Shown here: piece after piece, positions 1 through 55,952 of the stretch
Position numbering within the stretch: the stretch's first letter is position 1
How the letters are laid out: each line of letters starts with the position of its first letter
Assembly: GCA_950097015.1 (NCBI GenBank)
Contig: CATNEN010000027.1
Span: 124,001-188,000 of the forward strand
DNA length: 64,000 bases
Reading direction: 5' to 3'
Source of the DNA: Macrostomum hystrix
Taxonomy: Eukaryota > Animalia > Platyhelminthes
Translations under genes and position numbers: made by a program
The notes under the pieces: generated by a model
What the model was told of the DNA's origin: nothing
Databases searched by the model: none
The model's input: only the letters and a program-made list of their open reading frames with translations

Positions 1-170
1 AGAGTGACGAGAAGGGACGGGAGAGTGACGAGAAGGGATGGAAGAGTGACGAAAAGTGATGGAAGAGTGACGAGAAGTGACGAGAGTGAGAGAAGTGAGA
101 GAGTGACGAGAAGTGACGGGAGAGTGACGAGAGGGGACAGGAGAGTGACGAGAAGGAACGGAGAGTAGCC
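1..170. repeat. Degenerate purine-rich minisatellite (~14-15 bp)
   Basis: Repeated AGAGTGACGAGAAG(G). Confidence 0.8.
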
Positions 171-302
171 AGACTAGTTTTCTCGCAAGAAAAAAGAATA
201 TACCCTTCTAGTTATTGCCTAAATATAAAATATTACAAAAAGGCTTATGAAAAGGAAAGCATTGTAATGCACCATTTTCTAAATCAAATTTCATTATTTT
301 TT

Positions 303-598
303 CTACGAGGACAAAAAGGCAGAAATGTTGAACTGTCTGCGGATACAGGTACTCAGTCGACCCTGGACATTGATTGACAGGTCATGCTTCAGGGAATCCA
401 GTGTCTGTGTTCTGCAAAGCTTCAGGTTTCTGCATTCAAGTATAGAACGCCGAAAGCGGAATATAATTATCAGCCCGATTTTCGCATTCCATTCGGCTCT
501 CAACTCCATTGTGTTATGAATGTTGCATTGGTTGGCATGCATGAATGCGTTCGGGATTTGTGGGGATTTGAATCTGACGAATTTGAAATCCGATGAGC
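303..598 (-). CDS. Probable terminal exon of the Dpr-like gene
   Basis: Strong acceptor tattttgtttcag at 599-600 joins in frame to ORF 303..542. Total CDS is 1209 nt (402 aa). No clear TM or GPI signal, so the assignment is uncertain. Confidence 0.4.
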
Positions 599-685
599 CT
601 GAAACAAAATATACGATATTTCTAAATTCTGTCTGATCTACATATTTCGATTTTCGGCTAATTTTGATTTTAGTTTTTTTATGTG

Positions 686-2324
686 AGTGTCCCTGATTCC
701 TGAGTTGACTGTCCCTGATTCCTCAGCTGACTGTCCCTGATTCCTCAGTTGAGTGTCCCTGATTCCTCAGTTGACTGTCCCTGATTCCTCAGTTGACTGT
801 CCCTGATTCCTCAGTTGACTGTCCCTGATTCCTCAGTTGACTGTCCCTGATTCCTCAGTTGACTGTCCCTGATTTCTCAGTTGACTGTCCCTGATTCCTC
901 AGCTGACTGTCCCTGATTCCTCAGTTGACTGTCCCTAATTCCTCAGCTGACTGTCCCTGATTCCTCAGTTGAGTGTCCCTGATTCCTCAGCTGACTGTCC
1001 CTGATTCCTCAGTTGACTGTCCCTGATTCCTCAGTTGACTGTCCCTGATTCCTCAGTTGACTGTCCCTGATTCCTCAGTTGACTGTCCCTGATTCCTCAG
1101 CTGACTGTCCCTGATTCCTCAGTTGACTGTCCCTGATTCCTCAGTTGACTGTCCCTGATTCCTCAGTTGACTGTCCCTGATTCCTCAGTTGAGTGTCCCT
1201 GATTCCTCAGTTGAGTGTCCCTGATTCCTCAGTTGACTGTCCCTAATTCCTCAGCTGACTGTCCCTGATTCCTCAGTTGAGTGTCCCTGATTCCTGGGTT
1301 GACTGTCCCTGATTCCTGAGTTGACTGTCCCTGATTCCTGGGTTGACTGTCCCTGATTCCTCAGTTGACTGTCCCTGATTCCTGAGTTGACTGTCCCTGA
1401 TTCCTCAGTTGACTGTCCCTAATTCCTCAGTTGACTGTCCCTGATTCCTCAGTTGACTGTCCCTGATTCCTCAGTTGACTGTCCCTGATTCCTCAGTTGA
1501 CTGTCCCTAATTCCTCAGTTGACTGTCCCTAATTCCTCAGTTGAGTGTCCCTGATTCCTGAGTTGACTGTCCCTGATTCCTCAGCTGACTGTCCCTGATT
1601 CCTCAGCTGACTGTCCCTGATTCCTCAGCTGACTATCCCTGATTCCTCAGTAGACTGTCCCTGATTCCTCAGTTGACTGTCCCTGATTCCTCAGTTGACT
1701 GTCCCTGATTCCTCAGCTGACTGTCCCTGATTCCTCAGTTGACTGTCCCTGATTCCTCAGCTGACTGTCCCTGATTCCTCAGTTGACTGTCCCTGATTCC
1801 TCAGTTGACTGTCCCTGATTCCTCAGCTGACTGTCCCTGATTCCTCAGTTGACTGTCCCTGATTCCTCAGTTGACTGTCCCTGATTCCTCAGGTGACTGT
1901 CCCTGATTCCTCAGTTGACTGTCCCTGATTCCTCAGCTGACTGTCCCTGATTCCTCAGTTGACTGTCCCTGATTCCTCAGTTGACTGTCCCTGATTCCTC
2001 AGCTGACTGTCCCTGATTCCTCAGTTGACTGTCCCTGATTTCTCAGTTGACTGTCCCTAATTCCTCAGTTGACTGTCCCTGATTCCTCAGCTGACTGTCC
2101 CTGATTCCTCAGTTGACTGTCCCTGATTCCTCAGCTGACTGTCCCTGATTCCTCAGCTGACTGTCCCTGATTCCTCAGTTGACTGTCCCTGATTCCTCAG
2201 TTGAATGTCCCTGATTCCTCAGTTGAGTGTCCCTGATTCCTCAGTTGAATGTCCCTGATTCCTCAGTTGAATGTCCCTGATTCCTCAGCTGACTGTCCCT
2301 GATTCCTCAGCTGACTGTCCCTGA
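686..2324 (+). repeat. 22-bp tandem array, left arm of palindrome (~74 copies)
   Basis: Unit GTTGACTGTCCCTGATTCCTCA. Confidence 0.97.
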
Positions 2325-2335
2325 GCAGCACTCAC

Positions 2336-2653
2336 GCAGCACTGTGAGCTGATGGCTAGCGGTCTCCAGTGTCGGCGGTCTCTCGCTCGGCTGCTTCAAG
2401 CACAGCCAGTCGCCGGTGTGCTCAAATCTTACGAAATAGATGGTGAGCACACTCACAATGGTGTCACCATCCATCCAGCTCATGCTGATGTCCATGCTGC
2501 TGGCATTGCTGCTTTGCCGCAGGCCCTGATGATACCATTCAACAGTGGCGTCGGGGTTGCGACGGGCGTCGCGACCGCGAAAAACAGCGGTGCAGGTCAG
2601 CGACACGAACTGCTCACCCTGCAGAACAATGCGCGGCCCGAAGATGTTCACGC
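2336..2653 (-). CDS. Dpr-like exon encoding the whole of Ig2 (318 nt, phase 1-1)
   Basis: ttgtttcccaccag|GC GTG AAC...VSLTCTA...VEWYHQG...VSVLTIYFVRFEHTGDWLC...LTVL C|gtgagt; Ig Cys-Trp-Cys pattern. Confidence 0.88.
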
Positions 2654-2700
2654 CTGGTGGGAAACAAGGTATGCGAGTTTGTCAAGTTTTTGATAATATA

Positions 2701-4721
2701 TGGGACAGTCACCTGAGGAATCAGGGACATTCAACTGAGGAATCAGGGACACTCAACTGAGGAATCAGGGACAGTCACCTGAGGAATTAGGGACAGTCAA
2801 CTGAGGAATCAGGGACAGTCACCTGAGGAATTAGGGACAGTCAACTGAGGAATCAGGGACAGTCAACTGAGGAATCAGGGACAGTCAGCTGAGGAATCAG
2901 GGACAGTCTACTGAGGAATCAGGGACAGTCAACTGAGGAATCAGGGACAGTCAGCTGAGGAATCAGGGACAGTCAACTCAGGAATCAGGGACAGTCCACT
3001 GAGGAATCAGGGACAGTCACCTGAGGAATTAGGGACAGTCAACTGAGGAATCAGGGACAGTCAACTGAGGAATCAGGGACAGTCAACTGAGGAATCAGGG
3101 ACAGTCAGCTGAGGAATCAGGGACAGTCAGCTGAGGAATCAGGGACAGTCAACTCAGGAATCAGGGACAGTCAGCTGAGGAATCAGGGACAGTCAACTGA
3201 GGAATCAGGGACAGTCACCTGAGGAATCAGGGACAGTCACCTCAGGAATCAGGGACAGTCACCTCAGGAATCAGGGACAGTCACCTGAGGAATCAGGGAC
3301 AGTCAACTGAGGAATCAGGGACAGTCAACTGAGGAATCAGGGACAGTCAACTGAGGAATCAGGGAGACTCAACTCAGGAATCAGGGACAGTCAACTCAGG
3401 AATCAGGGACAGTCAACTCAGGAATCAGGGACAGTCAACTGAGGAATCAGGGACAGTCAGCTGAGGAATCAGGGACAGTCAACTGAGGAATCAGGGACAG
3501 TCAGCTGAGGAATCAGGGACAGTCAACTGAGGAATCAGGGACAGTCTACTGAGGAATCAGGGACAGTCAACTCAGGAATCAGGGACAGTCTACTGAGGAA
3601 TCAGGGACAGTCTACTGAGAAATCAGGGACAGTCAACTGAGAAATCAGGGACAGTCCACTGAGAAATCAGGGACAGTCACCTGAGGAATTAGGGACAGTC
3701 AACTCAGGAATCAGGGACAGTCTACTGAGGAATCAGGGACAGTCTACTGAGAAATCAGGGACAGTCAACTGAGAAATCAGGGACAGTCCACTGAGAAATC
3801 AGGGACAGTCACCTGAGGAATTAGGGACAGTCAACTGAGGAATCAGGGACAGTCAACTGAGGAATCAGGGACAGTCAACTGAGGAATCAGGGACAGTCAG
3901 CTGAGGAATCAGGGACAGTCAGCTGAGGAATCAGGGACAGTCAACTCAGGAATCAGGGACAGTCAGCTGAGGAATCAGGGACAGTCAACTGAGGAATCAG
4001 GGACAGTCACCTCAGGAATCAGGGACAGTCACCTCAGGAATCAGGGACAGTCACCTGAGGAATCAGGGACAGTCAACTGAGGAATCAGGGACAGTCAACT
4101 GAGGAATCAGGGACAGTCAACTGAGGAATCAGGGACAGTCTACTGAGGAATCAGGGACAGTCACCTGAGGAATCAGGGACAGTCAACTGAGGAATCAGGG
4201 ACAGTCAACTGAGGAATCAGGGACAGTCAACTGAGGAATCAGGGACAGTCAGCTGAGGAATCAGGGACAGTCAACTCAGGAATCAGGGACAGTCCACTGA
4301 GGAATCAGGGACAGTCACCTGAGGAATTAGGGACAGTCAACTGAGGAATCAGGGACAGTCAACTGAGGAATCAGGGACAGTCAACTGAGGAATCAGGGAC
4401 AGTCAGCTGAGGAATCAGGGACAGTCAACTCAGGAATCAGGGACAGTCAGCTGAGGAATCAGGGACAGTCAACTGAGGAATCAGGGACAGTCAACCCAGG
4501 AATCAGGGACAGTCACCTCAGGAATCAGGGACAGTCACCTCAGGAATCAGGGACAGTCACCTGAGGAATCAGGGACAGTCAACTGAGGAATCAGGGACAG
4601 TCACCTGAGGAATCAGGGACAGTCAACTGAGGAATCAGGGACAGTCAACTGAGGAATCAGGGACAGTCAGCTGAGGAATCAGGGACAGTCAACTGAGGAA
4701 TCAGGGACAGTCAACTGAGGA
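2701..4721 (-). repeat. Same 22-bp array in inverted orientation, right arm (~92 copies)
   Basis: Unit TGAGGAATCAGGGACAGTCAAC is the exact reverse complement of the left-arm unit. Confidence 0.97.
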
Positions 4722-4758
4722 CTAGGAGACCGTAAAGTTTTCAACATCGCGAGCTCAC

Positions 4759-4800
4759 TTTTAACAGCTTTGCTGACGTCCGGAAACGTTGCAGCCTCAT
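4759..4800 (-). CDS. Dpr-like linker micro-exon (42 nt, phase 1-1)
   Basis: gcgttttcag|AT GAG GCT...AAA A|gtgagc; encodes DEAATFPDVSKAVK in frame. Confidence 0.6.
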
Positions 4801-4884: not shown

Positions 4885-4986
4885 CATTTTGCAGTGTTTT
4901 CGAAGATCCATTGGCTCCTGTTTTTCTTGTTTTGCTGCCCTCTGATTTCTTCGAAGCTTTGCCCAAATCGCTAACTGGTTTGCTCT
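4885..4986 (-). CDS. Dpr-like linker exon (102 nt, phase 1-1)
   Basis: aatgcag|AG AGC AAA...AAT G|gtgagc; encodes K/S-rich ESKPVSDLGKASKKSEGSKTRKTGANGSSKTLQNG in frame with both neighbours. Confidence 0.65.
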
Positions 4987-5384: not shown

Positions 5385-5598
5385 CTCTCACAACCAGTTG
5401 GAACCGCTTCTCTTCGAGGCGCTCCAGTGTGTTCACCTGGCACATGTACTCGCCAGAGTCCTTGACCTCGGCAACCTGGATCACCAGGTTCCACTCGTCG
5501 GGACTCGAATAGTCAATCTTCACCCGCTGGTCCGAGGTGAACACCGTCCGCCCGATGGTGAGCGGGATGTCTCGGCCGTCGTTTTTCATCCAGGTTAC
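5385..5598 (-). CDS. Dpr-like exon 3 (C-half of Ig1)
   Basis: ccgcag|VTWMKND...LTIGRTVFTSDQRV...WNLVIQVAEVKDSGEYMCQVNT...LVVR|gtgag. Contains the TxDxR and DSGxYxC motifs typical of Dpr/ZIG-8 Ig1. Confidence 0.9.
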
Positions 5599-5657
5599 CT
5601 GCGGATTTTATGGTCTGATCAGTGAGGAGTGAGCTCAATAGAACTCCACATGAAAAT

Positions 5658-6152
5658 CACTGCTAGCATATTAGAATCCCACTGCTAGCTTATTAGAATC
5701 CCACTGCTAGCATATTAGAATCCCACTGCTAGCTTATTAGAATCCCACTGCTAGCTTATTAGAATCCCACTGCTAGCTTATTAGAATCCCACTGCTAGCT
5801 TATTAGAATCCCACTGCTAGCTTATTAGAATCCCACTGCTAGCTTATTAGAATCCCACTGCTAGCTTAATAGAATCCCATTGCCTATACTTAAATCCTAC
5901 TATTAACAATAGAGTCTCAACTTTAGAATCGCTTTACAAACAATAAAATCCCATCATTAACATTAGAATCCCATCATTAACATTAGAATCCCATCATTAA
6001 CATTAGAATCCCATCATTAACATTAGAATCCCATCATTAACATTAGAATCCCATCATTAACATTAGAATCCCATCATTAACATTAGAATCCCATCATTAA
6101 CATTAGAATCCCATCACTAACATTAGAATCCCATCATTAACATTAGAATCCC
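5658..6152. repeat. Two adjacent related minisatellites (22 bp, then 20 bp)
   Basis: TATTAGAATCCCACTGCTAGCT (5658-5880) and AACATTAGAATCCCATCATT (5945-6152). Confidence 0.92.
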
Positions 6153-7129
6153 ATTTTTTTTGTTCAAAATCCCATACTTTGATCCGTGATCCCGTCTCAC
6201 ACCTCGGTGAGCAGTGCCATTCGGCCTAGAAACTTGCCGAAACGCTGAGAATCTGGTAGATTTCACAGCATCCATAGCCTTCATCTGGCCCTGCGGCCCC
6301 GCATCGATCGAGTGTGTTGCACCGAAATCCCCAATCTCACGCTATCCCCAGCCCATTGATTAGTCCAAGTCCTAATCCCACTCAGGGATGTGGAAGAAAG
6401 TGAAGAAAATCTACATTGGGACTTTCGTTTGTCTGCTCAACTGCAATTTCCCTTTCGGCTGTTCTTAACCTGAGATTTCCTCTCGATTAAGGGGGGATTT
6501 TTTGAAACGACGGGATCTAACGTTGCGTGCGCTGCTCAGTGAGGAAGCCTGGGGTGGGGGGTCAAAAATCCCTTTTGGAAAGTCCGCCGGCGAAACACTC
6601 GCCGGGGGTGGGACAGACTGCGGGGGGTAGGTGCGGTCGAGGTGAGAAGTAGGACTCTAGTTTTCGATCCTTAACGGCTGCGAGGGGCCGGGCGGGCTTA
6701 ACCAGTTACTGGTTACTGCCGGGGGCACGCGCGGCTGTTCGGCGATGATGCAAATCGTGGCAAAAAAGGTAGGATAATCAATCAAGGATCAACCTGTCTT
6801 AGCGAGAGTCGCCGAGGGCCCATTAGCGCGAAAATGGCTCTGCCTGAAGTTGTCCACGATCCCACTTGAAGCTGTCAGCCAGGTAGCAATAACCACACCG
6901 CCGCTGATAATACCATCCTCATTTATCCCCTCAACTTGACCTCTCCTCTTCCCACTTGACGATCGGTCATCGTTAGGTAGATTTTCCCGATTTTTCTGAT
7001 CCTCTTTCAAAACGGAGTCTGGCCAGGCCACCCAGCAACCATTGGCAATTATCGAATTCCATGCTGCATCCAAGGACGGCCGCTGGCCTATTATCTCCAA
7101 TTATACGTTCACGATCTCCACTTCTTCTT

Positions 7130-7442
7130 CCGTTCTGCCCCTCGGTCTCCCTGTTCCGCCCCTCGGCCTCCCTGTTCCGCCTCTCGGTCTCCCTGTTCCA
7201 CCCCTCGGTCTGCTCGTTCCGCCCCCCGGTCTCCCCGTTCCGCGCCTCGGTCTGCTCGTTCCGCCCCTCGGTCATCCCTTTCCGCCCCTCGATCATCTCT
7301 TTCCGCCCCTCGGTCATCCCTTTCCGCCTCTCGGTCATCTCTTTCCGCCCCTCGGTCATCTCTTTCCGCCCCTCGGTCATCTCTTTCCGCCCCTCGGTCA
7401 TCTCTTTCCGCCCCTCGGTCATCCCTTTCCGCCCCTCGGCTT
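7130..7442. repeat. 21-bp minisatellite
   Basis: CCGCCCCTCGGTCATCTCTTT; explains ORFs at 6973-7578. Confidence 0.92.
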
Positions 7443-7472
7443 CTCTCAATCTCGTAGGCCCTTTAAGCTCAC

Positions 7473-7627
7473 CACATGCTTGCCCAGATTGCGCACAACG
7501 CATCGAATAAGCACCGGCTCGAACTCATTGAAGACCAGTTTGGTTCGGACTGTGTTCTCAAAGCAGACTCGCCTGTAGTCAGGATGACCGCAGTGCCGGC
7601 TGCCGCTGTCAAGGAACGGTTTCACAC
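7473..7627 (-). CDS. Dpr-like exon 2 (N-half of Ig1)
   Basis: ccag|GT GTG AAA...CFENTVRTKLVFNEFEPVLIRCVVRNLGKHV|gtgagc. CxVRNLG matches the Dpr Ig1 B-strand motif. Confidence 0.85.
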
Positions 7628-20782: not shown

Positions 20783-21047
20783 CGCATCCGCATGGTGGCA
20801 GCCAGATGGTGCAAAGGTCCTGCGCCACGCCTGCCGCTGCCGCCGCCGCCTGTCAGCGCCTGATGACATGCCAGTAGAGCCAGTCCGGAGGACTTTCCGC
20901 TGCCGCCGCCTCCGCCGGGTGAGTTGGCGAATTTTACGGTCACGGGTTCGACTCCGCCGTCTGGCACGTAGCCGTTCAGCTGGCGAATAGCAAGTTCAGC
21001 CTCCGAGCGCTGATCGAACCTGATGAAACCAACTCCCTTGGAGAGGC
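20783..21047 (-). CDS. ELAVL: ELAV-like exon 3 (RRM2 C-half, hinge)
   Basis: cctcag|GLSKGVGFIRFDQRSEAELAIRQLNGYVP...EPVTVKFANSP...MR|gtgag. Confidence 0.92.
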
Positions 21048-21062
21048 CTGAGGACGGTTTTA

Positions 21063-21735
21063 GAGTGGAGCACAGAATGTTGAGAAGCAGAGCACAGAAT
21101 GTTTGAGAACTAGAGCACAGAATGTTTGAGAACTAGAGCACAGAATGTTTGAGAAATGGACAACAGAATGTTTGAGAAGTGGACAACAGACTGTTGAGAA
21201 GTGGACAACCGAATTTTTGAGAAGTAGAGCACTAAATGTTTGAGAAGTGGACAACAGAATGTTTGAGAAGTGGACAACAGTATGTTTGAGAAGTGGACAA
21301 CAGAATGTTGAGAAGTGGACAGCAGAATGTTTCAGAAGTAGAGCACAGAATGTTTGAGAAATGGACAACAGAATGTTTGAGAAGTGGACAACAGAATTTT
21401 TGAGAAGTAGACAACAGAATGTTTGAGAAGTGGACAACAGAATTTTTGAGAAGTGGACAACCGAATTTTTGAGAAGTGGACAACAGAATGTTTCAGAAGT
21501 GGACAACAGACTGTTTGAGAAGTGGACAACAGACTGTTTGAGAAGTGGACAACAGAATGTTTGAGAAGTGGACAACAGACTGTTTGAGAAGTGGACAACA
21601 GAATGTTTGAGAAGTGGACAACAGACTGTTCTAGAAGTGGACAACAGAATGTTTGAGAAGTGGACAACAGAATGTTTGAGAAGTGGACAACAGACTGTTG
21701 AGAAGTGGACAACAGAATGTTGAGAAGTGGATATT
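21063..21735. repeat. 23-bp minisatellite filling ELAV intron 2
   Basis: GAGAAGTGGACAACAGAATGTTT. Confidence 0.93.
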
Positions 21736-21783
21736 TAAACCGTGACGTGAACATTTGAGCTTTGATGGCTGCAGAGCGGTCTA

Positions 21784-22125
<342 letters not shown>

Positions 22126-32800: not shown

Positions 32801-34741
32801 CATCCGTTTCAAATGAGAATTAGTGCAAATGAAAGCTGGGAATCTCTGCAACATTTTCTGTTTCACCATATTTTTTTATGCTGGAGTGGCTCCGAACAGC
32901 TTGCCATTTAGCACAGACAGGTCGAATGAAAAAAGTGACAGAATGACATAGAGCAAGCAGTCTATGGCCAACTTTCTTCATGCGCTGACAAACTCCACAG
33001 TGTCTAGGAAGCCTACTGTCGATCGGTCGCTCTGTTTGTGGGGCTTGCTTTACTTCTTCACAGATAATCAGATACATTATAAACAGAAGGTAAACAAAAA
33101 TGTAACACGGGAATTCTGGCAAAATCATTCACATCAGGGAAAATCAAGGGTAGCAGTAATGATGTTAAAATGAGCTGGATTTATTAGTATCGTGTTGCTC
33201 CTCCCTGTGCAGCAATGACAGCCTCGCATCGAGATCGCATGGATTGAAGCACTCTGTGCACAAGGGGCTGCGGTATCGCTGCCCACTCCTCTGCAATAGC
33301 GGGAGTCAGTGCTGCAAAGTTCGTGATATTCCTGCGAGCAAGCCTTGTCCCCAGCTCATCCCACAGGTGCTCGATTGGATTCAAGTCCGGGCTGTTGGCT
33401 GGCTGTTGCTGCTTGTGAAGCTGCTCCACAACTGCACAGCGATGCGGGGTGGCGTTGTCATCTTGCAGTATGAAGCCAGGACCCACGCTTGCTAGCCCAA
33501 ATGGTAGAGCCACATTGCGCAGAATGTCTACGTAGCCATGACCAGTGAGTGTCCTATCAATGAACTCAATTGCGGACAACTCGTTCCAGGAGGCAGCTGC
33601 CCAAATCATAACGGAAACGGAACCACCACTTCCACCACGTCTTGTTACCCATTGCACCGCTTCCTGTTGCGCATATCTCGAATTCTTCTCTCGGCGAACG
33701 CACACCCGACCATCATTCCACTGAACCGAGAATCCACTCTCGTCCGTGAACACGACTTGACGCCAGTGCTGCAGAGCTGACCAATGACGGTGGTGGAGAG
33801 CCCATTGGAGTCTTGCAGCTCGATGCGCAGCAGTCAGTTTAGGAAACTTGAGGGTTCTGTAGCTCTTCAGCCCTGCTGCCTTCAGGCGTCGAGAATTGGA
33901 GTCTTGCAGCTCGATGCGCAGCAGTCAGTTTAGGAAACTTGAGGGTTCTGTAGCTCTTCAGCCCTGCTGCCTTCAGGCGTCGAGAATTGGAGTCTTGCAG
34001 CTCGATGCGCAGCAGTCAGTTTAGGAAACTTGAGGGTTCTGTAGCTCTTAAGCCCTGCTGCCTTCAGGCGTCGAGAAATGGTCATCTGCGATGTCGTAAC
34101 GTGCAGCATTTTGTGCAGCTCTCGCTGTAGCTCTGGCAGGGTTACAAATGGCTGATCGATCGCCACGGCAGCAACAAACTGATCGCACTCTGCGTCCATT
34201 GCACGTGGACGGCCTGACCTTTGGTCATTGGTGACAGAATTCGTTGCCGCAAATTTGGTCGCATAGTGCTGAACAGTAGATTTTGGCACAACGAGATGGT
34301 TTGCAATCCTGCCAAGCGACCAGCCTGCGTCCTCTCGAAGCGAAACGATTCTCCAACGAATTTCTTGGCTCACAACAGGCATGTCTCTCAGAAAGGGCAA
34401 GTTAAGTCATGGAACTTTGCAAGGAAGCACCTGGGGTTATACAGTGTGCAACAGTTTAGGCCATAGACATGTCGCCTGGGGTGAAGAAGTAAAGCAAACC
34501 CCACAAGCAGAGCGACGATCAACAGTAGGCTTCCTAGAAACTGTGGAGTTTGTCAGCGCGTGAAGAAAGTTGGCCATAGACTGCTTGCTCTATGTCATTC
34601 TGTCACTTTTTTTCATTCGACCTGTCTGTGCTAAACAGCAAGCTGTTCGGAGCCACCCCAGAAGAAAAAAATACGGCAACACAGAAAATGTTGCAGAGAT
34701 TCCCAGCTTTCATTTACACAAATTTTCATTTGAAACGGATG
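32801..34741 (-). mobile_element. Tc1-family DNA transposon with ~260-bp terminal inverted repeats, defective
   Basis: 32801-33061 is the reverse complement of 34481-34741 with some mismatches; transposase lies between them. No clean TA target duplication seen. Confidence 0.92.
33184..34382 (-). pseudogene. Tc1 DDE transposase, frameshifted
   Basis: N-terminal HTH, VFTDES, ILQDDNA..H and SPDLNPIEHLW motifs. A 91-bp triplication at 33804-34076 breaks the frame, and D-to-E spacing is 28 rather than 34. Confidence 0.9.
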
Positions 34742-48863: not shown

Positions 48864-48961
48864 CTATATAATTATTTTGTAAATTTTGAGTTTAATTTAG
48901 TCCATAGACGGTCTTGTTATGCTTCTAAAGCCTAAGATTCTTAGAGAGCAGCATGACTTAC

Positions 48962-50978
48962 TCTCTCGGCAATCATTAGAGTGTGCCAATGCCTGCTAGA
49001 TATATCGGCTACCAGATGCAGCGAGCCAAAAATTGGTCTGGGCGTCGACACACAAGCAGCTGCGGACGCTCTGTTCATGTTGAGCAGACTGGCCGCTTGT
49101 AGTTCGATGCCTAGCCGGCCATTGTCGGCCCGACCCCAGCTGTAGATGTGATTGTCTGTAGTACAGGCCACTGTGAATCCGTCTCCGCAGGCCACTCGCA
49201 AAAAACGTTTTCCACCGCAGGCTCGGCCAATGTTGAAAATGCCATTGCGATGTCGCAATTCGCCAAGGCCGAGTTCTCCCACGCGATTAGAACCGAACAT
49301 TAGCAGCTGGTTGCAGTCATCTATAGCCGCTGTGTGGAATCGGCCGCAGCTTAGCTGTCTCACACGATACTTTGTCAGCGGCTTTACCACCTTAAATGTG
49401 TGCATACAAGGCGTATCAAAGCTGCAAGTCGAATTAGCCGCCGTTAATCCTTTAGCTACGCTGTTAAAGCCTAGCTTGTTGTTTTCGTTGCTGCCGCAGG
49501 CCAGGACTCGGCCGCCGTCAGTCAGTAAAAAGCTGCCATCTGAGCCGCAGCAGGCACTAACAATCAGTTGTTTTTTTACTGGCAGACTGACTGGCTGCGG
49601 GGTGTCGTAGTCGTCCTCGCTGTTAAGCCCGAGACGGCCGAATTCACCGCAGCCCCAGGCAAACACCTCCGATTGGCGCGTCACGACAACAACGTGTGCG
49701 TCTCCGCATGCAACACGTTTAACTTCTAGGCCGACGAAGAAAGGTATTGGCACTGGTTCTAGCACCTGGTCCGAGTCTCCCATCTCCTCCTCAAGCTGTT
49801 CCCTGGGCACGCCGAGACATCCATGGTAATTTGAACCACACGTGTACAGTTGACCTTCGACACTGCGCAGCACAGTAAAGTCGTCGCCGCAACGCGCCTC
49901 TTCAATTGGTACGCCGACCAGTTTTGCTACCTTTTTCGGCGCCCGATAAGATGCCAAGTCGCCGTGACCCAGCTGGCCGCTGAGCTTTGTGGTACCTTGC
50001 ACATTGCACCAGGTGAATACCTCGCGCTCTATGGTCACAACTGCCATGTGCTGACTTCCTGTAGCCACCTGAAGTGCACTATTCTGCCGTTCGAACTGCT
50101 CAATCTTGATCGGAGTCTGTTTTCCACCACCCCAATAGAACACTTCGGTCGTCTTGGCAGTCACCACAGGCGTTGTATCTGTCCCGGCACTCGACGGCCT
50201 AGCCAATCGGCTTTGCTGTTGAAGTTCACGAACTCGCGATCGCATCTTATCACGGTCGGTAAATAAACCATCTTGTGTGAGAATTGCGCTTGTTGACGGC
50301 CTGGCCTCGGGCTCTTTGCTGAGTGTTGCGCTGAGCAATGCTTTAAGCTGTGTCGAATAGCTTCCATCCACTAAGGATACATTAATCTCCGTGTGAACTA
50401 TGTTCTGAGCCAATTTTAATTGATTTGTTGCATCAAATGCCCGCTTCAGAGTGAGCAGTTCAAACAGCACACAGCCTAGAGCCCAAATGTCGCTCTTATA
50501 GTCGTAAGGCTTGCCCTGAACTAGCTCGGGTGACATGTAGTACGGAGTTCCCTGGCATGTCTCGGCCATTTGATCGCTGCCGAGTACCTTGGCTATGCCA
50601 AAATCACCTAGTTTAATGAGACCCGCCTTAGTTAGAAAGATGTTTAAGGTCTTGATGTCCCTGTGAAGTATTCCGGCTTCGTGGATGTGCTGAATGGCAG
50701 TAGTCAGCTGAAAGAAGTACCAGATTACAGTCTCCTCTTTGAGCAGAGAAGCACACTGGCCAAGAAAGTGATAAAGGGACCCTCCGTTAGCGTACTCCAT
50801 TTCAATAAGCAGTACGCTGCCGTCGAAGAAATGGTTATAGTAGGCCACTATGTTTGGATGGTCCAGCATGTGTAGCACATCAATTTCATTTTGTGCTTCA
50901 CGTCTTCGTCTCTCGTCTAGTCCGGTCAAGTTAATCATCTTCCATACAACTAGTTGCTCTTCGTTCTCCTCAGTTTTT
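48962..50978 (-). CDS. NEK9: NEK9-like kinase, exon 2 (kinase domain and RCC1 repeats)
   Basis: HRDIKTLNIFLTK, KLGDFG and GTPYYMSPE, followed by RCC1 repeats; ends IAER|gtaagt. Confidence 0.95.
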
Positions 50979-51219: not shown

Positions 51220-52321
51220 TCTTTAACGATGTATCTAAAGCTAGGCTTCTCTTCTAGTTGTATATTATTGTAGATTCTACGCAGTCTGCATACTATAAAG
51301 AAATTTAAACTAATTGTTTGTCTTCGAAGTAATTCTGTAATTAATAGCTCTGGCTACTGAGATACTGTTGTAAAATCAAAGTGTTCAGAGAGAATTGCAA
51401 GCTCGGTTGTAAGAAAGGGTTTGACAATGTAAGAATGTGCAGTATTCTTTTAAAGGGACCACTAGGACCAGTCAGTGTTCAGGCAGACCAGCCAACAGAA
51501 AGCTTTAGTGCGCATAACCTTACAGCCAACTCAGCATTTTCTTGCCTGTACGTACACCTTTCTTCTCTGTCCTCTCGCTCTGGTCTCAATTTTACTCAGC
51601 CCTACCACCCCAGATTTCTGTCTATTCTATAATCAAGCTGCAGATTTTGTCACTCCCAGGCGATTCCACCCGCCTCTCCGTTCTCTGTACAACCGCCTCG
51701 TTTCTCTGGACCGCTATGCCCACCCTCTGGCCGTCGGCCCCAGGTACTATCCATACACCAGCCATTATTAAGTTCTTGCAGCCTTACAACTGCCTTTCCA
51801 TTGCCTCCCCTTTAATTTCGCCATTCAGAACGTCCGATGGGGCACCTTGTTTATCTCAAACTCTTTCCACCCTTCCCTGGAAATTTCCTATCCTACATTT
51901 TTTCTAGCTTGTCGGCTCTCTACGGCCTTTTTTCTACCCCTCGTCTCAGGTTTCCTCCCCAATCAGTAGCGTAACGCTGATTTGTTTTTTCGTGACACAA
52001 TATGCTTTGTTACGTTTCAAGAAATACATATCACAAAGGGTGTTATCATAAATTTTTTTTGCCTAGCGAGCTTGTAGCCAATTGGTTCGAGCTTTGAACT
52101 TCTGAACGAGAGGTCCTGAGTTCGAATCCAATTTAGCATTTTGTCTCAATAATTGTCTAATTTTCTTACAAATTTTTCTTTAAGAATGACACTTAAGCTT
52201 ACCAGCTTTAGTTAAACAAATATATCTGTTAGTACATTCTCTCTAATTGTCTAATCAATTATGGCCCGAAATGCTCATGGATATTTATGCTACTACTATT
52301 TCAGCCAATAGTCAGCTCAGC
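51220..52321. promoter_or_regulatory. Divergent (possibly bidirectional) upstream region of NEK9 and PRPF19
   Basis: Start codons face apart 1.1 kb; inferred from geometry only. Confidence 0.45.
52065..52135 (+). pseudogene. tRNA-like pseudogene or SINE head
   Basis: A-box-like GTAGCCAATTGG and B-box GAGTTCGAATCC; acceptor stem does not pair. Confidence 0.45.
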
Positions 52322-52648
52322 ATGTCCCTATCGTGCAGCATATGCCAGGAGGTGCCCGAGTGCCCTTGCGTCTCCCAGGTGTCTGGCCACGTATTTGAAC
52401 GTCGCCTAATTGAAAAGTACATCCAAGAGAACGGCACAGATCCAATTAACGGCGAGCAATTGTCTGTTGACCAGCTGGTGGACATTAAGGTGCCGCCGTC
52501 GGCTAAACCGCGACCGCCAAGCGCCACCAGCATCCCGGCTATATTGAAGGCCCTGCAGGATGAATGGGACGCTGTTATGCTGCACTCGTTCACTCTGCGA
52601 CAACAGCTGCAGACGGCCAGACAGGAGCTGTCCCAGACTATGTACCAG
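52322..52648 (+). CDS. PRPF19: Pre-mRNA-processing factor 19, exon 1 (U-box, coiled coil)
   Basis: [18 protein letters not shown]...[17 protein letters not shown]...[18 protein letters not shown]...YQ|gtgact. Confidence 0.95.
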
Positions 52649-52729
52649 GTGACTATATGCCTTTTTATCTCAATTTTCTGTATTTGGGATCGTGTTTACC
52701 AAGAGTTGGATTTTAATTTAGGCGTCTAG

Positions 52730-53060
52730 AATATTAATTTCACTGGCACATCAATTGTTGTCAGTAGACCCGCAGCCAGCGAGAATACAATTCTGCCCAT
52801 GCCGCTGACTCCTGAGACCTGAGCACACACTCCCACAGGCACATGCTAAAATGTGTGTACATTTGCCCTGACATCGTCAGGCAGTGTATAATCTCACTGT
52901 GCCTTGAATGTTGGCCCTCAAAGGCATAAATTACACGAAACGCCCCCAAGCCTTCTCTCCGCGGCTGCGCAACAAAATAGAAGTGTCCTCACCGTAAAAT
53001 CGAGCTCAGGGGCCATGGTGCGAGACGCAAGCGCGTTAGACCACTCTGCCACTCACCCCT
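52730..53060 (-). mobile_element. SINE family A, copy 3 (in PRPF19 intron 1)
   Basis: Reverse complement begins AGGGGTGAGTGGCAGAGTGGTCTAACGCG and matches the other copies. Confidence 0.75.
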
Positions 53061-53220
53061 CCTGATGTGGGATTCAGGTCTGAGGAATTTTAATTGCGTT
53101 TATCTAAATGTGGCATGTGGGATAAGAATTCGACAACTCTAGATTTTTAACCTGTTAATGAGGTCTTCATAAACCAGTTTTGTCCATCTCCGTAATGTCA
53201 TAAAATCCCCAAATCCCCAG

Positions 53221-53832
53221 CACGACGCCGCCTGCCGAGTTATCGCCCGCCTCACAAAGGAGGTGACAGCCGCCAGGGAGGCCCTGGCCACGCTGAAGCC
53301 GCAGACGATTCAGCAGCAGCTGCCGCCATCGGCTGCCGCTACGCCGCAGCATCCGCCGCCAACGCCGGAGCACATTGGCGCCGGCGGCGACGTTCATCAG
53401 CAGGCCGCGCTCGAGGAGCCGTCAGGCATGTCGGACGCCGTCACCAGCCGGCTCGAGCAGAAGGCCAAAGAGCTCACCGCTCAGCGAAAACAGCGCGGCA
53501 AATCCGCTCCAGAGGGCCTTTGCTCGATGGACTCAGTTGCCGCCTACCGCCAGCTGGCCAGCCACATCGGCCTGCACTCGGCCTCCAATCCTGGCATTCT
53601 CTGTCTGGACGCTTTCCAAGCTAATCCGGCTCGGGTGGTCACGGGAGGCAACGACAAGAATGTGGCCGTGTTCAACACCGACGCCCAGCAGTTGGTGTGC
53701 TCGCTTCACGGCCACAGTAAGAAGGTCACGTCTGTGGCGCATCATCCTTACGAGGAGGATCTGGTGTTCAGCGGCGGCCAGGACGCCTTGATACTGATGT
53801 GGGATCCACGCAGTGCCAGCGTTCGAACTCAG
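53221..53832 (+). CDS. PRPF19: PRPF19 exon 2
   Basis: ccccag|HDAACRVIARLTKEVTAAREALATLKP...GLHSAS..WD40 repeats|gtttgc. Confidence 0.93.
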
Positions 53833-53884
53833 GTTTGCTCAGCCGATGTTTTCACATAAGTTTATCGCGCAAGACATCCCGATA

Positions 53885-54720
53885 TAGAAATCCTATGCAT
53901 TTCCCCATGGATTCCCCATAGAATCCCCATGGATTTCTTCCAGGAATCCCCATGGATTTACTCACAGGAATCCCCATAGATTTCTTCACAAGAATCCCCA
54001 TGTATTTCCTCACAAGAATCCCCATGGATTTCTTCCAGGAATCCCAATGGATTTACTCACAAGAATCCCCATGGATTTCTTCCAGGAATCCCCATAGATC
54101 TCTTCACAAGAATCCCCATGGATTTCTTCCAGGAATCCCCATGGATTTCTTCCAGGAATCCCCATGGATTTCTTCCAGGAATCCCCATGTATTTCCTCAC
54201 AAGAATCCCCATGGATTTCTTCCAGGAATCCCCATGGATTTCTTCCAGGAATCCCCAAGGATTTAGTCACAGGAATCCCCATAGATTTCTTGACAAGAAT
54301 CCCTATGCATTTCCTCACAATAATCCCCATGGATTTCTTCCAGGAATCCCCATGGATTTCTTCCAGGAATCCCCAAGGATTTAGTCACAGGAATCCCCAT
54401 AGATTTCTTGACAAGAATCCCTATGCATTTCCTCACAATAATCCCCATGGATTTCTTCCAGGAATCCCCATGGATTTACTCACAGGAATCCCCATAGATC
54501 TCTTCACAAGAATCCCCATGGATTTCTTCCAGGAATCCCCATGGATTTCTTCCAGGAATCCCCATGGATTTCTTTCAGGAATCCCCATGGATTTACTCAC
54601 AGGAATCCCCATAGATCTCTTCTCAGGAATCCCCATACATTTCCTTTCAGGAATCCCATGGATTTCCTCACGGGAATCCCATGGATTTCCTCAAAGGAAT
54701 CCCCATGGATTTTCTCACAT
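53885..54720. repeat. ~23-bp minisatellite filling PRPF19 intron 2
   Basis: AGGAATCCCCATGGATTTCTTCC variants. Confidence 0.92.
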
Positions 54721-54749
54721 AATTCACCATATACTCTCTCTTCTCGCAG

Positions 54750-54965
54750 ATTCGCGCTCACGAAGACGCCGTGACCGCCCTTTCCGTTCATCCAACCGGC
54801 GACTTTCTACTGTCCGGCTCTCGCGATGGCACCTGGGCATTCGCCGACATCCGCGCCGGCCGCCTGCTTGTCCGGGTGGCCGACCCGGCCGGACACCAGC
54901 CGCTCACTTGCGCCCAGCTGCATCCAGACGGCATGATTGCCGCCACTGGCACCAAGGATGCTCAG
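54750..54965 (+). CDS. PRPF19: PRPF19 exon 3 (WD40)
   Basis: ctcgcag|IRAHEDAVTALSVHPTGDFLLS...LHPDG..GTKDAQ|gttggt. Confidence 0.93.
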
Positions 54966-55009
54966 GTTGGTTCTGTGTGCTCAGCTAACTGCTGTATGCT
55001 CAACTTCTC

Positions 55010-55345
55010 CTGTCACTCTCTACCTGTCACTCCCATCTCCCCTGTCACTCCCCTCTCTACCTGTCACTCCCATCTCCCCTGTCACTGCCCTCTCCCCTGT
55101 CACTCCCCTGTTCCCTGTAACTCCCCTTTCCTGTCACTTCCCTCTCTACATGTCACTCCCCTCTCTACCTGTCACTCCCCTCTCTACCTGTCACTCTCCT
55201 CTCTACCTGTCACTCCCCTCTCTACCTGTCACTCTCCTCTTCCCCGTAACTCCCCTCTCCCCTGTCACTCCCCTCTCTACCTGTCACTCTCCTCTCTATT
55301 TGTCACTCTTCTCTTCCCTGTCACTCCTGTTTCCCTGTAACTCTA
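55010..55345. repeat. ~19-bp pyrimidine minisatellite in PRPF19 intron 3
   Basis: TGTCACTCCCCTCTCTACC. Confidence 0.88.
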
Positions 55346-55514
55346 TTTTTCTGTGACTTTCTGTTGTATATCTCTAATTGTAAGCAGCCTCTCTCACTCT
55401 ATCTAAACTTGATCTGTTAACACCCTGATCTCTCTCTCCGTCCGTCACTGTCACGTGGATAATGATTTCCGTTTTAATTCGCTTTCACTGTAACTAAACC
55501 GCCTCCCAATCCAG

Positions 55515-55952
55515 GTGAAAATCTGGGACCTACGAGAGCAGAAGAACCTGGCCAACTTTTCTGAGCACACAGCTCCACTGTCGGCTCTAGCCTTCTCCGA
55601 GAATGGCTACTATCTGGCCACGGCCGCCGAGGACGCCACTGTGCGGCTCTGGGACTTGCGCAAGCTGAAGAACTTCAAAGTTCTCCACCTGGCTGGATCC
55701 GGCGGCTCCGAGTCCCAGACTGCCGCCGCCACTTCTTACGCCCGGGCGCTGGCTTTCGACCACTCCGGCACTTACCTGGCAGCCGGCGGTGGTGATATAC
55801 GACTCTACCACACCAAACAGTTCAACGAGCTGTGCTCTCTGGATAATCACACGGCCGCTGTTACCGGCCTGCGCTTTGGCGCCAACGCGCGCTCAATTGT
55901 TAGCTGCTCTCTAGACCGCAGCCTGAAGGTGTTCGGCTCCGGCGCCGACTAG
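55515..55952 (+). CDS. PRPF19: PRPF19 exon 4 (WD40)
   Basis: ccag|VKIWDL...FSENGYYLATAAED..VRLWDLRKLKNFK...SLDRSLKVF; total 530 aa. Confidence 0.95.
   Translation: MKIWDLREQKNLANFSEHTAPLSALAFSENGYYLATAAEDATVRLWDLRKLKNFKVLHLAGSGGSESQTAAATSYARALAFDHSGTYLAAGGGDIRLYHTKQFNELCSLDNHTAAVTGLRFGANARSIVSCSLDRSLKVFGSGAD

What the first reader, a model, noticed from the sequence alone, without database searches (positions are those of the whole stretch)
686..4721. An Ig-domain exon is the loop of a ~4-kb satellite palindrome
Seen: the two introns flanking the Ig2 exon (2336-2653) are almost entirely the same 22-bp unit in opposite orientations (~74 and ~92 copies). They stop ~10 nt from the donor and ~45 nt from the acceptor. 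No other array in the window has an inverted partner. Established: complementary flanking intron sequences (e.g. inverted Alus) promote exon skipping, back-splicing and ADAR editing. Inference: the pre-mRNA can form a duplex of up to ~1.6 kb looping out exactly one Ig domain, i.e. a possible satellite-built splicing switch in a Dpr-type recognition gene. In DNA it could also form a cruciform or allow exon inversion.
Basis: partly seen in the sequence, partly recalled or inferred. Interest (0 to 1): 0.82.

Follow-up and report, generated by a model that had tools for sequence, protein, structure and literature searches.

The report
Inverted minisatellite arrays bracket Ig exon
In the flatworm Macrostomum hystrix, one immunoglobulin-domain exon of a Dpr/IgLON-like neuronal adhesion gene lies between two kilobase-long arrays of the same 22-bp repeat in opposite orientations. 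The layout is real and locally born, and should fold the pre-mRNA into a huge stem around the exon, but it is not conserved in a sister species and nothing shows it is a regulated switch.

Summary
Array A1 (684-2324, 74.6 copies) and array A2 (2702-4721, 91.8 copies) carry the same 22-bp unit on opposite strands. They are 94% complementary over 1641 nt in every register, and they bracket a 318-nt minus-strand Ig exon (2336-2653) with intact splice sites.

- **Locus-specific:** the unit occurs nowhere else in the 220-Mb genome, which matches the published Macrostomum hystrix assembly exactly in size and contig number.
- **Not a mirror artefact:** each arm has private variants and private internal duplications.
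- **Common origin:** the arms share polymorphic positions, the truncation phase at the exon-proximal ends, and a rare variant found only there. This points to a local inverted duplication followed by independent growth.
- **Gene model:** The last exon lies just outside the window.
- **Not conserved:** the M. lignano introns are also full of arrays, but none form an inverted pair.
- **Recurrent:** other first-stage notes report the same layout at ten or more other loci of this genome. I verified one, at SCHIP1.

The RNA stem is thermodynamically overwhelming, so some circular RNA or in-frame exon skipping is likely. A selected "switch" is unsupported, and no transcript data were reachable. This is a new variant of a known kind.

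The parts
684..2324 (+). Array A1: 74.6 copies of the 22-bp unit TGACTGTCCCTGATTCCTCAGT as read on the + strand. It lies in the intron downstream of the Ig2 exon, and the pre-mRNA carries the purine-rich complement.
   Evidence: TRF; unit catalogue
2325..2701 (-). Unique 377-nt loop between the arms. It holds 11 nt of intron after the donor, the Ig2 exon, and 48 nt of intron before the acceptor, including a likely branch point (cttgAc, about 29 nt upstream of the AG).
   Evidence: Sequence reading; own-genome DNA search finds only itself plus a 72%-identical paralogue on C1
2336..2653 (-). Ig2 exon: 318 nt, phase 1-1, 105 full codons. It is conserved in the C1 paralogue (68% aa identity, dN/dS 0.14) and in the M. 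lignano orthologue (88%).
2702..4721 (-). Array A2: 91.8 copies of the same unit in reverse orientation. It fills 96% of the intron upstream of Ig2. In the pre-mRNA each unit reads cTGACtgtccctgattcctCAG, which resembles a branch point plus pyrimidine tract plus AG.
   Evidence: TRF
4759..4800 (-). A 42-nt in-frame microexon of the Ig1-Ig2 linker (ttttcag|ATGAGG...TTAAAA|gtgagc). Its donor lies 37 nt from the outer end of A2.
   Evidence: Sequence; same-size microexon in the M. lignano orthologue, NDEA...K motif
4885..4986 (-). Linker exon: 102 nt, phase 1-1. The acceptor is inferred.
   Evidence: Sequence; aligns with the ...SSKRLPN linker of P0001
5385..5598 (-). C-terminal half of the Ig1 domain, ending in phase 1.
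   Evidence: best PDB relatives are Dpr, DIP, ZIG-8 and IgLON
7467..7625 (-). N-terminal half of the Ig1 domain.
   Evidence: tblastx against the C1 paralogue; matches P0001 residues 26-80
1..683 (-). Distal part of the downstream intron. It contains a different 21-bp array (1-166, continuing 361 nt upstream of the window) and 517 nt of unique sequence. The true last exon (polyQ plus a hydrophobic GPI-like tail) starts at window -393 = C27:123607.

Best explanation
This is a genuine, lineage-specific structural mutation in Macrostomum hystrix, a genome in which about one third of the sampled sequence is minisatellite arrays.

**Origin (inferred).** An intronic 22-bp array next to the Ig2 exon of a two-Ig, GPI-tailed Dpr/IgLON-like gene had its exon-proximal end copied in reverse orientation into the intron on the other side of the exon. 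The route was either a replication template switch or re-insertion of an excised array fragment. Both arms then grew and diversified independently.

**Consequence (predicted).** The pre-mRNA carries about 1.6 kb of 94%-complementary sequence. Pairing would loop out the exon together with its branch point and both splice sites, and would bring the microexon donor (37 nt outside the stem) towards the far side.

**Expected products (by analogy only).** As with complementary intronic repeats in other animals, I expect some 318-nt circular RNA and/or an in-frame Ig2-less mRNA. The stem may also be edited or diced.

**Status.** It is most likely a tolerated by-product of array turnover, not an evolved switch. 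The structure, its uniqueness, the origin signature and the lack of conservation are shown. The RNA outcomes are inferred.
For: - **Structure and uniqueness:**
- **Arms are not mirror copies:** A2 has private variants and three copies of a ~20-unit block; A1 has other private variants.
- **Arms share ancestry:**
  - The consensus is identical and the same 8 polymorphic positions vary in both arms.
  - Unit divergence between arms (6.0%) is no greater than within them (5.2% and 6.5%).
  - Both inner ends are truncated at the same unit phase.
  - The rare TGAATG variant, followed by TGAGTG, occurs only in the innermost units of both arms. My post-hoc combinatorial estimate for that placement is about 1e-5.
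  - The outer ends differ in phase.
- **The exon is old and constrained:** there is a paralogous block on C1, dN/dS is 0.14, and the M. lignano orthologue has the same exon phases.
- **Arrays turn over:** the paralogue and the orthologue both have their introns packed with unrelated arrays and no inverted pair.
- **Recurrence:** a second exon-bracketing inverted pair was verified at SCHIP1, about 960 nt at 84% complementarity.
- **Stem feasibility:**
- **Possible editing enzymes:** A_deamin-domain genes are present in the genome.
- **Literature:** complementary flanks promote back-splicing and skipping (PMC8330042); the Sry exon sits between inverted repeats of more than 15 kb, and 30-40 nt can suffice (PMC4201285).
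- **Assembly quality:** PacBio/canu, QV 42.8 (PMC10468722).
Against: - No RNA evidence of any kind was available.
- Hairpin stability is a poor predictor of circularisation and can even inhibit it (PMC4201285).
- Co-transcriptional splicing, or helicases, may pre-empt pairing.
- The stem starts only 11 nt after the donor, so it might block U1 binding rather than help back-splicing.
- The origin mechanism is inferred from edge symmetry only; no microhomology or target duplication was seen at the junctions.
- Raw reads were not inspected.
- Absence in M. lignano, a distant congener, does not exclude conservation among closer relatives.
Confidence: 0.6

Rival explanations
1. A selected satellite-built splicing or circRNA switch. 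Regulated pairing of the arms (for example through helicase, ADAR or RNA-binding-protein levels) toggles between a two-Ig protein, a one-Ig GPI-anchored isoform and a 318-nt circle.
For: - The exon is frame-symmetric and the skip is in frame.
- All splice signals lie in the loop.
- The stem is very strong and no competing partner exists in the same introns.
- The circle would carry an endless ORF with in-frame AUGs.
- Neuronal genes are rich in circRNAs (PMC8330042).
- The layout recurs around frame-preserving exons according to other first-stage notes (these are unverified and subject to ascertainment bias).
Against: - The layout is not conserved in the M. lignano orthologue.
- There are no fixed differences between the arms, so the arrangement is young or homogenising.
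- The genome is about one third arrays, so such pairs are expected occasionally from mutation alone.
- There is no expression evidence.
Confidence: 0.12
2. DNA-level origin or role. An inversion with one breakpoint inside an ancestral array flipped the exon, and recombination between the resulting inverted arms flipped it back. The locus may still flip, giving alleles or somatic cells with an inverted (null) exon.
For: - Inverted arms of 1.6 kb at 94% identity are substrates for inversion by homologous recombination (general knowledge).
- Another first-stage note reports a cassette bounded by inverted arrays that is seen in both orientations in this genome (s1-358544, unverified).
Against: - A single inversion predicts that an inner edge of one arm matches the outer edge of the other. 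Instead the two inner edges match in phase and in rare variants.
- Only one copy of the loop exists in the assembly, in the correct orientation.
- It needs two events, the first of which is a null allele.
Confidence: 0.1
3. An assembly artefact, such as a fold-back chimeric long read or a mis-join inside a repeat.
For: - The assembly comes from noisy PacBio reads with canu (PMC10468722).
- Tandem arrays are error-prone.
- C27 is a small contig of 974 kb.
Against: - A fold-back chimera gives an exact mirror. Here the arms differ in length (74 and 92 units), in private variants and in internal block duplications, and the centre is a unique, conserved, correctly oriented exon.
- The 4-kb structure is shorter than typical reads.
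- A similar layout at SCHIP1 has arms diverged to 84%.
- There are no Ns.
Confidence: 0.07
4. A foldback-type transposon, or two insertions of an array-bearing mobile element.
For: - Long inverted arms made of tandem repeats are the hallmark of foldback elements.
- Other notes report such elements with 170-bp satellite arms in this genome (s1-278234, s1-084976).
Against: - The 22-bp unit exists only at this locus.
- The loop is a host exon that is syntenic with a paralogue and an orthologue.
- No target-site duplication and no transposase were found.
Confidence: 0.03

Closest known systems
Mouse Sry exon between >15-kb inverted repeats (Capel 1993 and Dubin 1995, as summarised in PMC4201285)
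   Same: A single exon with consensus splice sites forms the loop of a large genomic inverted repeat. The stem-loop model places donor and acceptor together, and the circular transcript depends on the repeats.
   Different: The Sry arms are a large segmental palindrome, not arrays of a 22-bp unit. Here the exon is an internal coding exon of a multi-exon gene, pairing can occur in about 70 registers, and no circular product has been shown.
Reverse-complementary matches (Alu pairs in ZKSCAN1/HIPK3, DNAREP1 in Drosophila laccase2, 13-nt RCM in C. elegans zip-2; PMC4201285, PMC4617980, PMC8330042)
   Same: Complementary sequences in the two introns flanking an exon. They promote back-splicing and, in zip-2, skipping of the same exon.
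   Different: Those elements are dispersed transposon copies or short unique matches of 13-300 nt. Here the complementary elements are locus-specific minisatellite arrays of 1.6-2.0 kb that fill 60-96% of the introns.
Foldback (FB/NOF, Rehavkus-type) transposons
   Same: Kilobase inverted arms built of short tandem repeats around a unique centre.
   Different: There is no dispersal, no transposase and no target duplication, and the centre is a conserved host exon. The membership tests failed.
Drosophila hairpin-RNA (hpRNA) endo-siRNA loci
   Same: A long inverted repeat transcribed as one RNA, sometimes built of tandem units, and a Dicer substrate in principle. The 22-nt period is close to siRNA length.
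   Different: hpRNA loci are dedicated non-coding genes with trans targets. Here the arms are introns of a coding gene, the unit has no other copy in the genome to target, and small RNAs were not testable.

Membership tests
Exon flanked by reverse-complementary intronic repeats (circRNA / skipping layout) | Complementary sequence in both introns immediately flanking the exon | tested here: met
   1641 nt at 94% complementarity; intron assignment fixed by the orthologue
Exon flanked by reverse-complementary intronic repeats (circRNA / skipping layout) | Cross-exon pairing favoured over pairing within one intron | tested here: met
   Cross-arm fold -563.6 kcal/mol (z -34) against -64 and -72 for single arms; no other partner array nearby
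Exon flanked by reverse-complementary intronic repeats (circRNA / skipping layout) | Observed back-splice junction or skipped transcript | not testable with these tools
   No RNA-seq access; protein collections hold no M. hystrix transcript products of this gene
Foldback transposon | Multiple dispersed copies sharing the arm repeat | tested here: not met
   Whole-genome pattern search: 72 forward and 85 reverse matches; every listed match (100 of 157) is in this locus and the totals fit the two arrays
Foldback transposon | Element-own centre (transposase or non-host loop) and target-site duplication | tested here: not met
   The loop is a host Ig exon syntenic with the paralogue and the orthologue; no duplication at the outer junctions
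Dpr / DIP / IgLON ('Wirin') IgSF proteins | Ig1 domain homologous to Dpr/DIP/IgLON Ig1 | tested here: met
   phmmer against PDB: Dpr2 1.3e-8, Dpr4, Dpr10, Dpr1, DIP-alpha, ZIG-8, OBCAM, IgLON5
Dpr / DIP / IgLON ('Wirin') IgSF proteins | Two Ig domains plus a C-terminal hydrophobic (GPI-type) tail, as in Dpr/ZIG-8 | tested here: met
   Exon map and the P0001 sequence: signal peptide, Ig1, linker, Ig2, polyQ, Ala-rich hydrophobic end. GPI attachment itself was not tested.
Dpr / DIP / IgLON ('Wirin') IgSF proteins | Orthology to arthropod Dpr rather than to another branch of the superfamily | not tested
Fold-back read / assembly palindrome artefact | Arms are exact mirror images about the centre | tested here: not met
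   The variant strings of the two arms differ in length, private variants and block duplications
hpRNA / endo-siRNA locus | Small RNAs of 21-22 nt mapping to both arms | not testable with these tools
   No small-RNA data

The most novel reading that the evidence does not exclude
Macrostomum hystrix has a genome-wide class of exons bracketed by locus-specific inverted minisatellite arrays. These arrays act as very strong intron-pairing elements. At this locus the arms would produce a regulated Ig2-less, GPI-anchored recognition protein and/or an abundant 318-nt circular RNA with an endless open reading frame. If so, rapid satellite turnover would be a generator of new isoforms and circRNAs in a neuronal recognition gene family.
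Probability: 0.12. Interest if true: 0.75.

Novelty: new variant of a known kind. Interest (0 to 1): 0.48.

Why it matters
Intron pairing by inverted repeats is the main known cis-determinant of exon circularisation, and it also promotes skipping. The known pairing elements are dispersed transposon copies or short matches. Here the pairing elements are young, locus-specific minisatellite arrays that almost fill the introns.

They arose in a genome where such arrays make up about a third of the sampled sequence and are completely replaced between congeners while the exons stay fixed. If the predicted RNA effects are real, satellite turnover would be a fast, local source of isoform and circRNA novelty.

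M. hystrix would then offer natural constructs of different ages (94% complementary here, 84% at SCHIP1) to study how stem length and identity affect splicing, editing and dsRNA sensing. At the DNA level these pairs are also candidate hotspots for exon inversion and breakage. Public long reads and RNA-seq for this species exist, so the question is directly testable.

Tried and rejected
1. **Fetching the whole 974-kb contig** for a census of direct versus inverted same-unit array pairs. The census is limited to 144 kb plus small loci.
2. **Re-locating other readers' cases through Pfam searches of the genome.** Ephrin (PF00812) and Asn_synthase (PF00733) loci showed no inverted pair in the ~3-kb loci returned. 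SCHIP-1 (PF10148) succeeded.
3. **My first gene model**, which spliced Ig1-C directly to Ig2 and rested on tblastx against the C1 paralogue. I rejected it once the M. lignano orthologue showed a linker exon and a 42-nt microexon.
4. **The idea that a 22-bp array on C1 is the ancestral homologue of A1.** It matches 15/22 at the best rotation, on the same strand as A1, with shuffle p about 0.001. I downgraded it because the array lies 3.5 kb beyond the paralogue's stop codon, not in the equivalent intron.
5. **Searching for transcript-derived proteins that would reveal isoforms.** P0001 as query returned only two M. lignano proteins. The exon as query found nothing in the 58-184 aa range.
6. **Ig2 exon against PDB.** It gave only weak, uninformative hits. 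The atlas search confirms a generic I-set Ig domain only.
7. **Literature search for circRNA together with minisatellite.** No paper among the best-ranked hits held both terms.
8. **Joined exons.** Exons were searched one by one by reference, and the full-length comparison used the tool-returned orthologue P0001.
Full report

Yes. Tandem Repeats Finder reports two arrays of period 22. A1 is at 684-2324 (74.6 copies, 95% matches). A2 is at 2702-4721 (91.8 copies, 94% matches). Their consensus units are reverse complements of each other. The inverted-repeat scan gives arms of 1641 nt at 94% complementarity in every 22-nt register.

Between the arms lie 377 unique bases. They hold a 318-nt minus-strand exon (2336-2653). 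It opens as an Ig domain from 2651 (Pfam Ig_3 E 6.5e-6, 27 bits against a curated cut-off of 30). It has an AG acceptor and a GTGAGT donor. The exon is phase 1-1, so skipping it keeps the frame.

A 44-nt dimer of the unit, allowing 3 mismatches, occurs 72 times forward and 85 times reverse in the whole genome. All 100 matches the tool listed are in this locus (57 were not listed), the two totals are about the number of dimers the arrays hold, and the control pattern gives zero. Among 68 distinct arrays in 144 kb of this genome that I could examine, this is the only local inverted same-unit pair.

**2. What genome and what gene?**

The genome has 220,453,370 bases in 42 contigs. That is exactly the size and contig number of the published Macrostomum hystrix assembly, which was built from PacBio reads with canu, polished with Illumina reads, and has QV 42.8 (PMC10468722).

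The Ig1 exon (5385-5598) finds Drosophila Dpr2, Dpr4, Dpr10 and Dpr1 as its best solved relatives, then DIPs, C. elegans ZIG-8 and vertebrate IgLONs. So 'Dpr-type' is fair at the superfamily level.

A profile-free search of 1.8 billion representatives with the Ig2 exon returned P0001, an M. lignano protein (BOX15_Mlig019336g3, 366 aa) that is 88% identical over the exon. Its locus is L053. Mapping P0001 on L053 and reading the splice sites fixes the M. hystrix model:

| Exon | Window coordinates (minus strand) |
|---|---|
| Ig1-N | 7467-7625 |
| Ig1-C | 5385-5598 |
| Linker exon | 4885-4986 |
| 42-nt microexon | 4759-4800 |
| Ig2 | 2336-2653 |
| Last exon (polyQ plus hydrophobic tail) | starts at -393 (C27:123607) |

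The 598 exon is not supported. The upstream intron (2654-4758, 2105 nt) is 96% A2. The downstream intron (2728 nt) is 60% A1 and 19% a different 21-bp array.

**3. Is it an artefact or a mobile element?**

I coded each 22-mer as a letter. The arms are not mirror copies. A2 carries private variants and three copies of a block of about 20 units. A1 carries other private variants. A fold-back chimeric read would give an exact mirror.

The loop is single-copy, and its only relative is a 72%-identical paralogous exon on contig C1. That exon sits in a duplicated block which also contains an ELAV-like neighbour. The unit is confined to this locus, the centre is a host exon, and I saw no target duplication. 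A foldback transposon is therefore excluded, although such elements with satellite arms are reported elsewhere in this genome.

**4. How did it arise?**

- Both arms have the same consensus, and the same eight positions are polymorphic, mostly with the same alternative bases.
- Mean unit divergence is 5.2% within A1, 6.5% within A2 and 6.0% between them.
- The two exon-proximal ends are truncated at the same phase of the unit.
- The rare TGAATG variant, next to a TGAGTG unit, is found only in the innermost units of both arms: A1 units 1, 2 and 4 from the inner end, and A2 unit 0.
- The outer ends differ in phase.

This mirror symmetry at the inner edges fits an inverted duplication that began at the exon-proximal end of one array and was deposited on the other side of the exon. 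The route could be a template switch during replication, or re-insertion of an excised array fragment. Independent expansion followed.

A single inversion with one breakpoint inside an array predicts a different edge pattern, in which an inner edge matches an outer edge. The mechanism is inference. I found no microhomology at the junctions.

**5. Is it conserved or selected?**

The Ig2 exon itself is constrained: dN/dS is 0.14 against the C1 paralogue, with saturated dS. The arrays are not constrained.

- The C1 paralogue's Ig2 exon is flanked by an unrelated 16-mer array and an unrelated 21-mer array.
- The M. lignano orthologue keeps every exon phase but has a 31-mer and a 42-mer upstream and a 24-mer and a 17-mer downstream, with no inverted pair anywhere in 33 kb.

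So intron arrays are replaced wholesale between congeners, and the inverted layout is specific to the M. hystrix lineage or to part of it.

Other first-stage notes list the same layout at ten or more other loci of this genome. I verified one. A SCHIP1 exon (C32:2601052-2601168) lies between 15-mer arrays at C32:2599552-2600717 and C32:2603306-2604266, which are about 960 nt long and 84% complementary. Recurrence at different ages, in a genome that is about 33% arrays in my sample, points to a continuing mutational process. Ascertainment by readers who look for exons prevents any claim of enrichment.

**6. What should it do?**

A mini-construct of ten units, the loop and ten units folds at -563.6 kcal/mol. 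Dinucleotide shuffles give -283 ± 8 (z -34). The arms pair end to end and the exon, its likely branch point and both splice sites stay in the loop. Each arm alone reaches only -64 or -72 kcal/mol per 220 nt.

Complementary flanking introns are known to promote back-splicing and skipping of the enclosed exon (PMC8330042). The Sry exon between inverted repeats of more than 15 kb is the classic case, and about 800 nt of artificial complementarity suffices for circularisation (PMC4201285).

The most likely RNA consequence is therefore some 318-nt circle and/or the in-frame microexon-to-last-exon mRNA, which would encode a one-Ig anchored protein. The circle would have an endless ORF with in-frame AUGs. 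A_deamin-domain genes are present, so editing of the stem is conceivable.

There are caveats. Hairpin strength does not predict circularisation and can inhibit it (PMC4201285). The stem begins 11 nt after the donor and may hinder U1 binding. No transcript evidence could be reached.

**7. Verdict.**

The RNA stem and its expected by-products are plausible. A purpose-built switch is not supported, given the lack of conservation and the recurrence of the layout elsewhere.

It is a new variant of a known kind: intron-pairing elements made of locus-specific minisatellite arrays. It has moderate interest and is directly testable with the public reads of this species.

Noticed in passing
L053:20308-21061 (M. 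lignano NIVC01002242.1): The array just upstream of the orthologous Ig2 exon is 18 copies of a 42-bp unit. The unit contains the exon's own acceptor (ctcacag) plus the first 16 nt of the exon. So the array was born in situ by tandem duplication of the 3' splice site, and the intron now carries 18 decoy acceptors.
   Followed up: partly
window 2702-4721 (minus-strand reading): In the pre-mRNA each A2 unit reads cTGACtgtccctgattcctCAG: a branch-point-like CTGAC, a pyrimidine-rich stretch and an AG. That makes about 92 tandem mimics of a 3' splice site in a species with widespread SL trans-splicing. Pairing with A1 would mask them.
   Followed up: no
G000:C32:2599552-2604266 (L054, L059): A second verified case: 15-mer arrays (units 13/15 identical after reverse complement, about 960 nt at 84% complementarity) in opposite orientation bracket one SCHIP1 exon (C32:2601052-2601168).
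   Followed up: partly
window 5385-7625 and 20824-22044 versus G000:C1:1813558-1838429: Block paralogy: the Dpr-like gene and a neighbouring ELAV-like RRM gene are both duplicated on contig C1 in the same order and orientation. Protein identity is about 68-86% and dS is saturated, so this is an old segmental or whole-genome duplicate.
   Followed up: partly
L043:9355-9919 (G000:C1:1808054-1808618): A 22-bp array 3.5 kb beyond the paralogue's stop codon matches the A1 unit at 15/22 positions at the best rotation, on the same strand as A1 (shuffle p about 0.001). It is either a chance match or a distant relative of the 22-mer. It is not in the equivalent intron.
   Followed up: partly
window 1-64000 and loci L038-L045: Minisatellite arrays (periods 4-153, mostly 13-47) make up 30% of the window and 33% of the 144 kb examined: 68 distinct arrays, nearly all with locus-specific units. 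The published assembly paper gives only RepeatMasker totals (22.9% of the assembly masked) and leaves the nature of the repeats to later work.
   Followed up: partly
window 33184-34400 (-): Two adjacent ORFs (189 and 156 aa) look like the catalytic and the DNA-binding halves of a Tc1/mariner-type transposase. A 91-bp tandem triplication at 33804-34081 lies between or within them.
   Followed up: no
window 48941-50938 (-), 52247-55952 (+): A 665-aa single-exon ORF has a NEK-type kinase domain followed by RCC1-like repeats. Next to it is a PRP19-like gene (U-box plus WD40) whose introns are again filled with arrays, for example 53902-54719 and 55016-55327.
   Followed up: no
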